Positions 37,269 through 40,672 of a stretch of DNA of 64,000 bases are shown piece by piece. The DNA is taken from IMG/VR virus record IMGVR_UViG_3300009508_000011, positions 1 through 64,000 of that record; one strand, 5' to 3'. The first letter of the stretch is position 1; the number at the start of each line of letters is the position of its first letter. The notes under the pieces were generated by a model. That model did not search any database. It saw only the letters and a list, made by a program, of their open reading frames with translations, and was not told the origin of the DNA. A program made the position numbers and the translations under genes.

Positions 37269-37272
37269 ATAA

Positions 37273-37292
37273 GGAGGGACCGAAGTCCCTCC
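37273..37292 (-). terminator. Terminator abutting the cassette
   Basis: GGAGGGAC-CGAA-GTCCCTCC. Confidence 0.85.
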
Positions 37293-37349
37293 CTGTCCAA
37301 GTCGGACAATGCTGTGGGCTCCAGAGAGATACAACCCACATAACATTGA

Positions 37350-38071: not shown

Positions 38072-38803
38072 CTACTTAGAACTGTAGAAACCACGAACCT
38101 TCTGACCAATGTCAGCTGTATATTCACTCAATAACGTATCGAATGAAATAGCTTTCAATGCAGCACCACGACCTTCTTTATCCGCAGTAGAAGACATCAA
38201 TACTAAGATGTTTTCGAAACGAGCACGAGAGGCAGGTGGAATACGCATTTCATTGAAACCACGGAATAACATGTTATCTGCGAACGTACCTGGGTACTCA
38301 GCCATGATATCCAAAGCACTACCGAACACTTCAGTAAATGCAGCACCTTCAAGGTTGTTAATGATTGCACTAATCGCTTGGTACAATTTCATTTGATTAC
38401 GTAAAATTGTTAACTTGTCATTAGGCTTGTTAGGAGCCATTGTAACAGCGTATTCAAGAATTGTTTGACAGTTAGGGTTTAACTCAGCTTTAACTTCTTC
38501 TGAGATTGTTTCTAACTCAACAGCAGGACTAGCAGGAGTTTCCTGACTATCACCAGCAGGCGGTGGAGTTTGCTCAGTGTCGTCGCCAGCAGGTGGGATA
38601 ACTACTGTTTCTTCAGAACCAGCCGCAGGACCTTCTTCGTCACCACTACCTTCAGTAGGAGTTCCTTCAGCAGGTTTGTTGTTAGATACTTGTTCAGGTG
38701 TGCCACCCGTTTGTTCAGTACCTTCAACTTTAGTTTCGGTGTTTTGCTCGTCACCAGATTTAACTTCTTGCTCTTTAGCAACTGTTTGTTTTTTTCTAGA
38801 CAT
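38072..38803 (-). CDS. Conserved hypothetical protein with disordered P/E/T-rich N-terminus
   Basis: ATG 38803 with GGAG; folded C-terminal half (EYAVTMAPNKP...NQMKLYQAI). Confidence 0.75.
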   Translation of the reverse strand: MSRKKQTVAKEQEVKSGDEQNTETKVEGTEQTGGTPEQVSNNKPAEGTPTEGSGDEEGPAAGSEETVVIPPAGDDTEQTPPPAGDSQETPASPAVELETISEEVKAELNPNCQTILEYAVTMAPNKPNDKLTILRNQMKLYQAISAIINNLEGAAFTEVFGSALDIMAEYPGTFADNMLFRGFNEMRIPPASRARFENILVLMSSTADKEGRGAALKAISFDTLLSEYTADIGQKVRGFYSSK

Positions 38804-38816
38804 TCTCATATCTCCG

Positions 38817-39266
38817 TTAGTTATCATTCATTTCGTCTTCGAGGTCTTGTAGGGCATTGTTCTTCTCTTTAGATATCTCTAAAGCAACATCCATGATGTG
38901 CTCAGCTATATCACGAGGCAACTCCATAAATTCATTCAAGGACAAACCAAAAGTTTTAGCGATGTTACGCTTACCAAACTTACGAATGGCATCATATAGT
39001 AAGCTGTCAGGACTGACCTGCTCAGCTGGATACATCTTAACGTAATCCAAGCCAGTAACATCTCTGTCATCGTAATTAGCTATACCATACGCTGTGTCGT
39101 AAGCCTCTACTTGCAAAGTCTTTGCGAGCAAAGTACTAATACCGGTTTGGGTTTCGAAAAGGTTGCTAAGTTCTTTACCGTACTCAACACCCCTCTCTAA
39201 TCCAAATTTAGTATCTATGACAGAGGTCGGCTTACCGTCGACTGAATTCTTTGCTCGCAGAGGGTA
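38817..39266 (-). CDS. Tail/baseplate assembly chaperone-like C-terminal ORF, probably reached by -1 frameshift
   Basis: Frame open from 39311 with no ATG/GTG/TTG before TTG 39131 and no RBS there; FGLSLNEFMELP resembles T4 gp51/tail-chaperone T motifs. Confidence 0.55.
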   Translation of the reverse strand, partial: YPLRAKNSVDGKPTSVIDTKFGLERGVEYGKELSNLFETQTGISTLLAKTLQVEAYDTAYGIANYDDRDVTGLDYVKMYPAEQVSPDSLLYDAIRKFGKRNIAKTFGLSLNEFMELPRDIAEHIMDVALEISKEKNNALQDLEDEMNDN

Positions 39267-40672
39267 AAAAAAGTTGTGGTCATATCCAAAGGAATGAATT
39301 CCGGAACATGTTCACCACGGATAACTTCATCAGGGTTATCACCTTTACCTTCTTTGATACTATCGCCGTAGCGGAGTCCACACGATGGACAATCAGTATT
39401 CGGGTAACCAATAACTGCAATGGTACAATCTTCAATGTACTCACCAATACTATTCATGATTGATGTACGGATTGTATCTTCCGCAGAAAAATCAGAACAG
39501 ATACTATCGATTGTATCGCGGTCATCGATAACGTCAGGAGATTCTTCATCACCCAAGTCGATAGATTTAATCCAGTGTGAATACTGACGCAGTGTTGCTA
39601 AACGACCTTGGTCTGTAATGTACTGGTCACGCTCACCACCTTTAAGTGGGATACGGAAAGCCTTGTCAACCATATTAACAGTAGTGTCAACCCAGTTGAA
39701 ACCAACTTGTTCAAAGTCGTATACGTTAGGAACCGCCAGTGTCATTTTAATACCGTCACCACCAAGTATTTCAGTAGTGCGAGTATTAAAAGCAAAGCCT
39801 TCTTGGTACTTAGCAATGTCTTCAGCAGTGTGTGTAGCATTACGCTTAGACATATGTTTCATTTGTTCTTCCGATAACTTAGAAGTATCAACTACACGTA
39901 AACGTGCAATGTTAACAGTACCTTCAGAAATATGATTACATTTAGTAATCTGTGCAACACAAGGTTCACGTAGCTCGTACCCATCAGGATACATAGTACA
40001 GACAATGCCCCATACCAGACTAGGTAAGTCAGTAGAAAGAATGATACGTTTTAGTTCTTCAGTATCTTTAGTACCAAAAGTAGTATCGTAAACATGCGCA
40101 AGGATAAAGTTAACTAAATAACTTTGAATATATACGCTACTGTTAGAGAAAATCATTCCGTTGGTAACACGACCAAGTGTAATCTTCTCTTGAGCAATGC
40201 GACGATTAAGTTCAAGAATAGCTGCGTTACTAGGAGCTTTAAGAGTTACCCACCCGCCAGTGTGCCATAAAGGAATAGGTACAATAGAACCAAGACCAAG
40301 TCTAGCCTTAACTTTCATTACTGCGGCTTCACCTGAAACAATACCAGAAGAGTCTTTAGCTCTTAAACGTGAAGCAGTGATTGGCTTATCATCGTGAGTA
40401 GGTCGGTTTGTCCATTCAGCTGAATCATCTTCCAAACGTTTACGGAATGTCTGACCACTCATTAAATGGTCTACACCTTTAGATACCGCTTCCATCCATA
40501 GTAAGGCATTTGGTCCAGCCTGTTGAATGTTTGGTAATTTACGAACATCTTTATCGATGGTGGTTGCGTTTGCATTGAGAAGCACTAAAGCTTCTTCAAT
40601 CGTTACAGGTTTTTCGCTAGGTTTATCACGTAGCGATTTAATCTCTGCCTTTGGGTCAATATTAACTGACAT
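39215..40672 (-). CDS. Baseplate hub/tail assembly protein (gp77-like; T4 gp26-like Cys motifs)
   Basis: 485 aa; PC...KC and CPSCG; ends with FF codons on a T7 run. Confidence 0.6.
   Translation of the reverse strand: MSVNIDPKAEIKSLRDKPSEKPVTIEEALVLLNANATTIDKDVRKLPNIQQAGPNALLWMEAVSKGVDHLMSGQTFRKRLEDDSAEWTNRPTHDDKPITASRLRAKDSSGIVSGEAAVMKVKARLGLGSIVPIPLWHTGGWVTLKAPSNAAILELNRRIAQEKITLGRVTNGMIFSNSSVYIQSYLVNFILAHVYDTTFGTKDTEELKRIILSTDLPSLVWGIVCTMYPDGYELREPCVAQITKCNHISEGTVNIARLRVVDTSKLSEEQMKHMSKRNATHTAEDIAKYQEGFAFNTRTTEILGGDGIKMTLAVPNVYDFEQVGFNWVDTTVNMVDKAFRIPLKGGERDQYITDQGRLATLRQYSHWIKSIDLGDEESPDVIDDRDTIDSICSDFSAEDTIRTSIMNSIGEYIEDCTIAVIGYPNTDCPSCGLRYGDSIKEGKGDNPDEVIRGEHVPEFIPLDMTTTFFTLCEQRIQSTVSRPLS

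What the first reader, a model, noticed from the sequence alone, without database searches (positions are those of the whole stretch)
38817..39311. Probable programmed -1 frameshift fusing a baseplate/tail-assembly gene to its downstream ORF
Near the end of the 485-aa gene the minus strand reads ACT TTT TTT ACC. This is a U UUU UUU slippery heptamer (T7 run at 39266-39272) in the correct X XXY YYZ phase. The -1 frame continues stop-free (YPLRAKNSVDGKPTSVIDTKFGLERGVEYGKELSNLFETQTGISTLLAK...) into the 38817 ORF. That frame opens only about 40 nt before the slip site and has no ATG/GTG/TTG for 45 codons, and the TTG at 39131 lacks an RBS. Predicted products are 485 aa and about 618 aa, the G/GT logic of tail assembly chaperones. 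The downstream FGLSLNEFMELP motif fits gpT/gp51-type segments. I know of no report of this in phiKZ-like phages.
Basis: partly seen in the sequence, partly recalled or inferred. Interest (0 to 1): 0.85.

Follow-up and report, generated by a model that had tools for sequence, protein, structure and literature searches.

The report
Conserved -1 frameshift in jumbo-phage gp77
A run of seven T's near the end of a conserved jumbo-phage gene (the phiKZ gp77 family) very probably makes some ribosomes slip back one base and add a 149-residue tail, and the same signal is present in every phiKZ-like phage examined, phiKZ included, where no report or annotation of it was found.

Summary
On the minus strand the 485-aa ORF (39215-40672) reads ACT TTT TTT ACC. 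The T7 run (39266-39272) is in X XXY YYZ phase. The -1 frame stays open for 149 codons to a TAA at 38819-38817, with no ATG/GTG/TTG for 45 codons and no ribosome-binding site.

The gene is a homologue of phiKZ gp77. The -1 ORF is a homologue of PhiPA3 gp073.

Across 65 related loci (60 distinct junctions), including phiKZ, PhiPA3, Goslar, RAY, PCH45 and SPN3US-like, EL-like and Vibrio phages:
- Every locus has a T5-T9 run at the homologous Phe-Phe codons.
- The P-site codon is TTT in 60/60, although TTT is only 34% of the other Phe codons in these genes.
- The -1 frame runs on for 149-181 codons; the +1 control has a median of 10.
- 33 of 57 loci have no start codon upstream of a conserved motif, and one has essentially none at all.
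- No relative encodes the fusion in a single frame.

So this is a family-wide recoding site that yields 485-aa and 618-aa isoforms. Ribosomal -1 slippage is most likely. Transcriptional slippage would give the same protein and is not excluded.

The tail-chaperone (G/GT) label is an analogy only. Gene order and fold do not match, and there is only a weak fold link to T4-like baseplate-hub assembly proteins. I found no published report.

The parts
39215..40672 (-). 0-frame ORF, 485 aa plus TAG; homologue of phiKZ gp77, PhiPA3 gp074 and 201phi2-1 gp136 (phrog_4585)
   Evidence: The AlphaFold2 model has pLDDT 80.5 and pTM 0.83, and the Phe-Phe pair sits in the last helix, residues 464-480.
39266..39272 (-). 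Slippery heptamer T TTT TTT (U UUU UUU in the mRNA) in X XXY YYZ phase; P-site TTT 39271-39269, A-site TTT 39268-39266
   Evidence: It is conserved at the homologous codons in 65/65 loci. The P-site codon is TTT in 60/60 unique junctions and the first base is T in 55/60.
38817..39266 (-). -1 frame extension, 149 codons plus TAA; homologue of PhiPA3 gp073, 201phi2-1 gp135 and the full-length form of PHIKZ076.4 (phrog_12109)
   Evidence: The AlphaFold2 model shows a roughly 30-residue low-confidence linker followed by a helical domain with a long C-terminal helix.
39215..39265 (-). Dual-coding overlap: 16 codons of the 0-frame tail plus its stop, read in the -1 frame as the start of the linker
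   Evidence: The 0-frame tail carries conserved residues (L471 and a Q-R pair), so the unshifted product is also under selection.
39312..39314 (-). TGA that closes the -1 frame 15 codons upstream of the slip site
38801..38815 (-). GGAG (38815-38812) and ATG (38803-38801) of the next gene, starting just after the -1 frame stop
   Evidence: The nominal ATG at 38827 has no Shine-Dalgarno sequence.
37271..37294 (-). First strong minus-strand intrinsic terminator downstream; none lies between the 485-aa ORF and the extension, so both frames are on one transcript

Best explanation
This is a programmed -1 recoding site in the jumbo-phage gp77 gene family. Most ribosomes read ACU UUU UUU ACC in frame and stop 16 codons later, giving a 485-aa protein that ends in a conserved helix. 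A fraction slip back one base while the two Phe-tRNAs occupy UUU UUU on the U UUU UUU heptamer and re-pair in the -1 frame. They then continue with UAC CCU ... for 149 codons. The result is a 618-aa isoform in which the last 16 residues are replaced by a flexible linker of about 30 residues and a helical domain of about 115 residues. The downstream 'gene' therefore has no initiation signals of its own in this phage and is expressed as a C-terminal extension. Shown here: the signal, its phase, the open frame, the absence of start signals, and family-wide conservation at synonymous sites. Inferred: that the shift happens on the ribosome rather than in the RNA polymerase; that both isoforms are made at a fixed ratio; and that the extension tethers the gp77 body to a partner, possibly during baseplate-hub or tail assembly. 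I put recoding of either kind at about 0.88. The 0.62 given as confidence is for the ribosomal mechanism specifically.
For: (1) Window anatomy.
(2) Family survey: 65 loci with 60 unique junctions all have a T5-T9 run at the same Phe-Phe codons. Heptamer counts are T TTT TTT 35, T TTT TTC 17, T TTT TTG 3, G/A TTT TTY 5. The -1 frame is open for 149-181 codons in 59/59 untruncated loci, against a +1 control with median 10 and maximum 102.
(3) Selection at synonymous sites: the P-site codon is always TTT although TTT is 34% of the other Phe codons in these genes, and 0 of 9-16 in several GC-rich ones. The base before it is T in 48/52 against a 28% third-position T background.
(4) No independent start: 33/57 loci have no ATG/GTG/TTG in the -1 frame upstream of a Phe conserved in over 90% of sequences. 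Only 2 have even a weak SD. L044 has no start until codon 151 of 154. In the window's clade, the ATG that L012, L067 and L068 carry at -1 codon 3 alternates with CTG, TTG and TAC, which tracks synonymous wobble of the 0-frame Leu codon.
(5) The linker from the slip site to the conserved Phe takes 16 different lengths (16-40 codons), always in frame.
(6) None of 50 gp77 homologues (480-564 aa) and none of the top 150 of 1,654 extension-family clusters (93-182 aa) is an in-frame fusion. The called N-termini of the extension are ragged, starting at profile positions 1-65.
(7) H_HH.U_UU.Y heptamers are among the most efficient -1 motifs in E. coli, and UUUUUUU is otherwise avoided in genes (PMC4066793).
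(8) One sub-clade (L035, L038, L044, L045, L047, weaker in L037) has a stem of roughly 8-13 bp (8-10 in most loci) starting 6-7 nt after the heptamer, which is the canonical stimulator geometry.
(9) No terminator separates the two frames.
Against: There is no protein, Ribo-seq or reporter evidence. No stimulatory RNA structure is conserved across the family: the mean z-score of the 60 nt downstream is +0.44, and many loci are unusually unstructured there. In the window's own clade RNAalifold finds nothing downstream (-3.5 kcal/mol). Some relatives, such as D6, PhiPA3 and L017, do have an ATG before the conserved motif, so independent initiation could contribute there. T7-T9 runs can also make RNA polymerase slip, which would yield the identical protein. 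The Phe-Phe pair lies in a structural helix, so part of its conservation is at the protein level.
Confidence: 0.62

Rival explanations
1. Programmed transcriptional slippage. The RNA polymerase, here probably the phage's own multisubunit enzyme, adds one extra U while copying the T-run. A subset of mRNAs then carries the extension in frame. The protein products would be identical to those of ribosomal slippage.
For: The site is a pure homopolymer of T7-T9 in 51/60 junctions. No conserved stimulatory RNA structure was found. UUUUUUU runs are discussed as transcriptional-slippage hazards in PMC4066793.
Against: Nine of 60 junctions have only T5-T6, which by general knowledge is short for polymerase slippage. 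In 18/60 junctions the A-site codon is TTC, cutting the run short even though TTT would lengthen it. The run always contains two in-phase Phe/Leu codons with TTT in the P site, which ribosomal tandem slippage requires and polymerase slippage does not. One clade has a hairpin at the ribosomal stimulator distance. No GC-rich hairpin sits directly upstream of the run in the window.
Confidence: 0.25
2. Two separate genes. The downstream ORF is initiated independently, by a non-canonical start codon or by termination-reinitiation coupling, and the T-run is only the codons of a conserved Phe-Phe pair.
For: Annotators and gene callers treat it this way in the annotated phage records examined here and in the metagenome gene calls. 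Some relatives have an ATG or GTG shortly after the upstream stop, and L012, L067 and L068 have an ATG two codons after the run.
Against: 33/57 loci lack any canonical start before the conserved N-terminal motif, only 2 have a weak SD, and L044 has no usable start at all. The first start lies anywhere from -87 to +151 codons from the run. The downstream gene is always in the -1 frame and always open back to the run, despite 16 different linker lengths. TTT is used at the P site in 60/60 against a 34% background. The window itself has no SD before any candidate start.
Confidence: 0.06
3. Artefact or decay: a homopolymer sequencing error, or a recent frameshift mutation splitting a single 618-aa gene.
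For: Homopolymer runs are error-prone in sequencing and in replication.
Against: The split into two frames is present in all 65 loci, from isolates and many independent metagenomes. No in-frame fused version appears among 50 gp77 homologues or among the top 150 extension-family hits. The 0-frame tail after the run is itself conserved.
Confidence: 0.01

Closest known systems
Lambda gpG/gpGT and the conserved tail-assembly-chaperone frameshift of tailed phages (Xu et al. 2004; from my own knowledge)
   Same: A -1 shift near the 3' end of the first ORF gives a short product and a C-terminally extended product from one mRNA. The second ORF has no start of its own. The arrangement is conserved across distant phages while the sequences diverge.
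   Different: It is not located between the tail-tube and tape-measure genes. The first ORF is 485-650 aa with an alpha/beta fold and four conserved Cys, rather than a helical protein of about 100-150 aa. There is no sequence or fold match to chaperone families. The slippery sequence is a U-run. I treat it as an analogue, not a member.
IS3-family orfA/orfAB -1 frameshifting
   Same: The heptamer type is the same: U_UU.U_UU.C is listed among the motifs used by IS elements. It produces a trans-frame fusion at a set ratio (PMC4066793).
   Different: IS sites normally have a downstream pseudoknot or hairpin and often an upstream SD-like element. Here none is conserved across the family. The proteins are unrelated.
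HIV-1 gag-pol frameshift site U UUU UUA
   Same: A U-run heptamer on which two tRNAs slip back one base (abstract of PMC4373837).
   Different: It is a eukaryotic ribosome system with a defined downstream stem-loop and an unrelated biological setting.
E. coli dnaX tau/gamma
   Same: A cellular or phage-type -1 frameshift that yields two isoforms sharing an N-terminal body and differing at the C-terminus (general knowledge).
   Different: In dnaX the shifted product is the shorter one. That site uses A AAA AAG with both an upstream SD-like element and a downstream hairpin.
Programmed transcriptional slippage (Thermus dnaX and IS elements; Baranov et al. 2005, as cited in PMC4066793)
   Same: A homopolymer run in the coding strand, and the same protein outcome.
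   Different: Known cases use runs of about 8-9 or more (general knowledge). Here the run is 5-7 in 38/60 junctions and is always in heptamer phase.
T4-like baseplate hub assembly proteins (Pfam PF12322 T4_baseplate; T4 gp26/gp51-type)
   Same: The predicted gp77 structure matches predicted structures of proteins of about 250 aa carrying these names, at Foldseek E 6e-5 to 3e-3 and target TM 0.39-0.56.
   Different: There is no significant sequence match: 1 of 33 members at E 0.067. gp77 is twice as long. As far as I know, no frameshift is known in the T4 genes.

Membership tests
-1 programmed ribosomal frameshift site (tandem-slippage X XXY YYZ type) | Slippery heptamer in the correct phase of the upstream ORF | tested here: met
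   T TTT TTT at 39272-39266 in phase. A perfect X XXY YYZ heptamer is in phase in 55/60 unique junctions; the other 5 have N TTT TTY.
-1 programmed ribosomal frameshift site (tandem-slippage X XXY YYZ type) | -1 ORF open from the heptamer, substantially long, and without initiation signals of its own | tested here: met
   149 codons in the window and 149-181 codons in 59/59 loci. 33/57 have no canonical start before the conserved motif. The window has no SD.
-1 programmed ribosomal frameshift site (tandem-slippage X XXY YYZ type) | Heptamer conserved at synonymous positions among orthologues | tested here: met
   P-site TTT in 60/60 against 34% TTT elsewhere. The first base is T in 48/52 against a 28% background.
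-1 programmed ribosomal frameshift site (tandem-slippage X XXY YYZ type) | Stimulatory element (downstream hairpin or pseudoknot at 5-9 nt, or an upstream SD-like sequence) | tested here: inconclusive
   Not conserved across the family (mean z +0.44) and absent in the window's clade. It is present in one sub-clade, where the stem starts 6-7 nt after the heptamer with z down to -3.3.
-1 programmed ribosomal frameshift site (tandem-slippage X XXY YYZ type) | Trans-frame protein detected and dependent on the heptamer | not testable with these tools
   Needs mass spectrometry, a western blot or a reporter assay.
Tail assembly chaperone G/GT pair | Located between the tail tube gene and the tape measure gene | tested here: not met
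   Neighbours are gp78/gp79-like genes, an RNA polymerase beta-like gene, a DNA polymerase and a helicase, both in the window and in phiKZ, PhiPA3, D6, FLC9 and LucasX.
Tail assembly chaperone G/GT pair | -1 shift near the 3' end of the first ORF giving a C-terminal extension | tested here: met
   The shift is 16 codons before the stop and the extension is 149 aa.
Tail assembly chaperone G/GT pair | Sequence or fold of a known chaperone family | tested here: not met
   No Pfam, NCBIfam or PDB sequence hits. Foldseek against PDB finds nothing. A 'tape-measure chaperone' entry in BFVD appears only at E 0.8.
T4-like baseplate hub assembly protein (PF12322) | Match to the Pfam model above its threshold | tested here: not met
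   The window protein has no hit. 1 of 33 homologues matches at E 0.067.
T4-like baseplate hub assembly protein (PF12322) | Shared fold | tested here: inconclusive
   BFVD predicted structures named 'baseplate hub subunit' or 'hub assembly protein' match at E 6e-5 to 3e-3, target TM 0.39-0.56 and 8-12% identity. Predicted structures are being compared with predicted structures, and no solved structure matches.
phiKZ gp77 family (phrog_4585) with downstream phrog_12109 | Significant full-length sequence similarity and conserved gene order | tested here: met
   phrog_4585 at E 1e-108 and phrog_12109 at E 8e-18. tblastn finds 215-240 phage records. PhiPA3 record notes link gp074 to phiKZ gp077.
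Programmed transcriptional slippage site | Long homopolymer run (typically 8-9 or more) irrespective of codon phase | tested here: inconclusive
   Run lengths are 5 (1 junction), 6 (8), 7 (29), 8 (18) and 9 (4), always containing in-phase TTT TTN. The slippage behaviour of the phage polymerases is unknown.

The most novel reading that the evidence does not exclude
The extra frame is reached not on the ribosome but by the phage's own non-canonical multisubunit RNA polymerase stuttering on the T-run. That would be a family-wide programmed transcriptional slippage used by nucleus-forming jumbo phages to set the ratio of two isoforms of a core protein, and the ratio could change as the phage switches from its virion polymerase to its non-virion polymerase during infection.
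Probability: 0.2. Interest if true: 0.8.

Novelty: new member of a known kind. Interest (0 to 1): 0.68.

Why it matters
phiKZ-like (Chimalliviridae) phages are the main model for the phage nucleus and are candidates for therapy, yet most of their conserved genes have no known function. This result has four consequences.

- It adds a protein isoform of roughly 620-700 aa that I did not find annotated in any record examined.
- It explains a 218-nt 'intergenic' gap in phiKZ, between PHIKZ077 and the truncated PHIKZ076.4.
- It shows that the small downstream 'genes', called with ragged N-termini in the phage records and metagenome gene calls examined (1,654 protein clusters match the family), are really the C-terminal extension of gp77.
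- It adds a recoding site outside the tail-chaperone module that is conserved across an entire phage family.

It also gives a concrete handle on gp77 function, since the two isoforms can be separated genetically. It provides a natural test bed for U-run frameshifting without an obvious stimulator. Finally, it may show whether phage factors that bind ribosomes, or the phage polymerases, tune recoding.

Tried and rejected
- Near-identity DNA search of the phage collection found nothing.
- The search for related loci with single distant proteins, or with the 8-sequence alignment, found only self-hits or failed. A 4-sequence alignment worked.
- Pfam and NCBIfam gave no family for either piece.
- PDB sequence profiles gave nothing, and Foldseek against PDB gave nothing for either model.
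- I looked for a universal downstream stimulatory structure by single-sequence folding against in-gene controls and by RNAalifold in the window's clade. Neither found one.
- An ATG two codons after the run in some close relatives looked like a possible real start. I rejected it because it alternates with CTG, TTG and TAC, following the wobble base of the overlapping Leu codon.
- I looked for natural in-frame fusions as 'Rosetta stone' evidence and found none.
- Literature searches for a prior report found none. This included the Goslar structure, Tn-seq, core-genome, antisense-screen and nucleus-interactome papers. 'gp77' in the Goslar and PCH45 papers refers to different genes.
- I tried to read the essentiality of the PCH45 homologue from the Tn-seq paper's main text. 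The gene numbering could not be mapped.
Full report
**1. The observation**

On the minus strand the 485-aa ORF (39215-40672) reads ACT TTT TTT ACC.
- The seven T's occupy 39272-39266, with TTT TTT as in-frame codons preceded by T. This is a U UUU UUU heptamer in X XXY YYZ phase.
- The ORF ends at TAG (39217-39215), 16 codons later.
- The -1 frame is closed by TGA at 39314-39312. After the slip it reads from TAC (39266) for 149 codons to TAA at 38819-38817.
- Its first ATG/GTG/TTG is the TTG at 39131, 45 codons in.
- No Shine-Dalgarno-like sequence precedes that TTG or any near-cognate codon. Of 17 ORF starts listed nearby, 14 have a GGAG/AGGA/GGGAG-type motif upstream.
- The next real gene starts with GGAG-N8-ATG (38815-38801), immediately after the -1 stop.
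- No minus-strand terminator separates the two frames. The first strong one is at 37294-37271.

**2. What the two pieces are**

The 485-aa protein belongs to phrog_4585 (E 1e-108). The -1 piece belongs to phrog_12109 (E 8e-18, covering profile positions 10-141 of 147). Neither family has an assigned function.

tblastn finds the first piece in 215-240 jumbo-phage genomes, including Pseudomonas, Erwinia, Salmonella, Serratia, Ralstonia, Vibrio, Klebsiella, Burkholderia, Escherichia and Xanthomonas phages. The PhiPA3 record identifies it as gp074, equivalent to phiKZ gp077 and 201phi2-1 gp136, with the downstream gene as gp073, equivalent to 201phi2-1 gp135.

The window is 100% identical over this locus to a 206-kb IMG/VR contig. 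It carries phiKZ-type neighbours: an RNA polymerase beta-like gene, a DNA polymerase, a helicase and a lytic transglycosylase.

**3. Comparative test**

I collected 65 loci giving 60 distinct junction sequences. They comprise:
- 46 loci from IMG/VR;
- six window-clade relatives from other metagenomes;
- 13 named phages: pEa_SNUABM_54, LucasX, FLC9, PhiPA3, D6, phiKZ, Goslar, RAY, SPFM17, VP4B, an EL-like phage, Viktualia and PCH45.

Every locus has a T5-T9 run at the homologous Phe-Phe (or Phe-Leu) codons, 8-44 codons before the stop. In every untruncated case the -1 frame continues from the run for 149-181 codons (median 165). The +1 frame control runs a median of 10 codons.

Heptamer counts among the 60 junctions:

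| Heptamer | Count |
|---|---|
| T TTT TTT | 35 |
| T TTT TTC | 17 |
| T TTT TTG | 3 |
| G/A TTT TTY | 5 |

The signal is selected at the nucleotide level.
- The P-site codon is TTT in all junctions, although TTT makes up only 34% of the other Phe codons in the same genes. In several GC-rich phages it is 0 of 9-16.
- The preceding base is T in 48/52, against a 28% background of T at third positions.
- UUUUUUU is normally avoided in coding sequence (PMC4066793).

**4. The downstream ORF is not an independent gene**

- A Phe in an 'HV..FG' motif is conserved in over 90% of the -1 peptides.
- In 33 of 57 loci, including the window, phiKZ and Goslar, no ATG/GTG/TTG lies upstream of that motif in the -1 frame.
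- Only two loci have even a weak SD before any such start.
- In L044 the first start codon is codon 151 of 154.
- The distance from the slip site to the conserved Phe takes 16 different values (16-40 codons), always in frame. The 'spacer' therefore evolves as coding sequence.
- Annotators have dealt with this inconsistently. In phiKZ there is a 218-nt unannotated gap and an 80-aa PHIKZ076.4 that starts at an internal Met. pEa_SNUABM_54 has a 75-aa stub. RAY gp266 is started upstream, inside gp267.
- In an exhaustive profile search the extension family has 1,654 clusters at 50% identity. The 150 best are all 93-182 aa, and their N-termini fall anywhere between profile positions 1 and 65.
- None of these, and none of 50 gp77 homologues (480-564 aa), is an in-frame fusion. 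This suggests that both the short and the long product are maintained.
- In the window's clade the string TTTTTTACCCT is invariant. The ATG that L012, L067 and L068 carry two codons after the run alternates with CTG, TTG and TAC, following the wobble base of the overlapping Leu codon. It is not a conserved start.

**5. Mechanism**

The site fits tandem -1 slippage. Both Phe-tRNAs can re-pair on UUU after moving back one base.

Heptamers of the H_HH.U_UU.Y class are among the most efficient in E. coli. U_UU.U_UU.U and U_UU.U_UU.C shift measurably even without stimulators (PMC4066793).

I found no stimulatory structure common to the family. The 60 nt after the heptamer are on average less structured than the rest of the gene (mean z +0.44). 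RNAalifold on nine window-clade sequences gives -3.5 kcal/mol with no covariation.

Two sub-clades do have hairpins:
- A stem of roughly 8-13 bp (8-10 in most loci; ACTCAGCG...CGCTGAGT) starts 6-7 nt after the heptamer in L035, L038, L044, L045 and L047, and more weakly in L037. This is the canonical geometry.
- A stem starts 2 nt after the T TTT TTG heptamers of pEa_SNUABM_54-like phages.

Transcriptional slippage on the T-run would give exactly the same protein and cannot be excluded. Four points argue against it as the general mechanism:
- nine junctions have only T5-T6;
- 18 junctions have a TTC A-site codon that shortens the run;
- an in-phase TTT sits in the P site without exception;
- one clade has a hairpin at the ribosomal stimulator distance.

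I put recoding of either kind at about 0.88, and the ribosomal route at about 0.6.

**6. What the products might do**

AlphaFold2 with 33-sequence alignments gives a confident model of the body (pLDDT 80.5, pTM 0.83). It is an alpha/beta protein with four conserved Cys (C238, C245, C428, C431). The Phe-Phe pair lies in the last helix, residues 464-480. The shift therefore removes most of that terminal helix. In its place it adds a low-confidence linker of about 30 residues and a helical domain with a long C-terminal helix (pLDDT 77.6).

Neither model matches any solved structure. Against predicted viral structures, the body matches its jumbo-phage homologues. It also matches, more weakly, proteins of about 250 aa named 'baseplate hub subunit' or 'T4-like baseplate hub assembly protein' (E 6e-5 to 3e-3, target TM 0.39-0.56). 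The Pfam model PF12322 is not matched significantly.

Two observations from the literature bear on function:
- The Goslar virion paper does not name gp80, gp81 or gp82 in its main text.
- A proteomics study lists the Churi homologue of phiKZ gp077 among early-expressed proteins.

An assembly role is therefore a lead, not a finding. The operational logic resembles lambda G/GT: a fixed minority of molecules carry an extra tethering domain. However, gene order, size, sequence and fold all fail the membership test for tail assembly chaperones.

**7. Novelty**

Full-text searches for frameshifting or slippage combined with phiKZ, Chimalliviridae, jumbo phages or gp077 found no report. None of the phage records I opened annotates a joined CDS at this site.

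The mechanism is of a well-known kind. What is new is its presence in this gene family, its conservation across the whole phiKZ-like lineage, and the reannotation that follows from it.

**8. Verdict**

The recoding interpretation is strongly supported by comparative genomics and remains untested experimentally. The tail-chaperone and gpT labelling is not supported beyond analogy.

Noticed in passing
window 836, 1336, 17812, 35038, 37264, 43995, 44808, 58529 (+ strand coordinates): A recurring motif, A7-9 followed by TAA(A)GGG and a GC-rich hairpin. The pattern AAAAAATAAAGGG gives 6 matches against 0.21 expected. Read on the minus strand these are hairpins followed by a T-tract, so they look like intrinsic terminators of minus-strand operons. 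Some, such as 1336 and 44808, look bidirectional.
   Followed up: partly
window 38801-38827 (-): The 251-aa ORF listed from ATG 38827 has no SD. An in-frame ATG at 38803 is preceded by GGAG at the usual spacing and lies just after the -1 frame stop, so it is probably the real start (243 aa).
   Followed up: partly
window 38789-38795 (-): The next gene begins Met-Ser-Arg-Lys-Lys-Gln, with AGA AAA AAA CAA. This is an A7 run (A AAA AAC heptamer) at codons 3-5. It is probably just a Lys-rich N-terminus and was not examined for recoding.
   Followed up: no
L060 (phiKZ AF399011 71442-73504): phiKZ has a 218-nt unannotated gap between PHIKZ077 and PHIKZ076.4. The gap is open in the -1 frame of gp77 and homologous to the extension family, and PHIKZ076.4 (80 aa) starts at an internal Met. 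Similar truncations or over-extensions occur in pEa_SNUABM_54 (75 aa), Goslar gp082, RAY gp266 and PCH45.
   Followed up: yes
L035, L037, L038, L044, L045, L047 (about 6-50 nt after the heptamer): A clade-specific hairpin, ACTCAGCG...CGCTGAGT. Its 5' arm encodes the conserved Thr-Gln-Arg of the 0-frame tail, and its 3' arm contains the 0-frame TGA stop. MFE is -15 to -19 kcal/mol in five of the six loci (L037 is weaker, -8.5 kcal/mol, z +0.65), with z down to -3.3.
   Followed up: partly
window 39261-39265 and homologous positions in other loci: The bases after the run are unusually fixed. ACCCT is invariant in the window's clade and 'NCC C' is very common across the family. This makes a Pro the second residue after the shift in most loci. 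It could reflect selection on the trans-frame peptide or a nucleotide-context effect on slippage.
   Followed up: no
window 39215-40672 (-), residues 238, 245, 428, 431: Four Cys are conserved in at least 90% of 33 homologues (C...C and CPxC). This suggests a structural zinc site in gp77-family proteins.
   Followed up: no
many loci, 60 nt after the heptamer (e.g. L017-L027, L054, L055): The region just downstream of the run is markedly G-poor and unstructured (z about +3 relative to the rest of the gene) in several clades. This is the opposite of what a stimulatory structure would give and remains unexplained.
   Followed up: no
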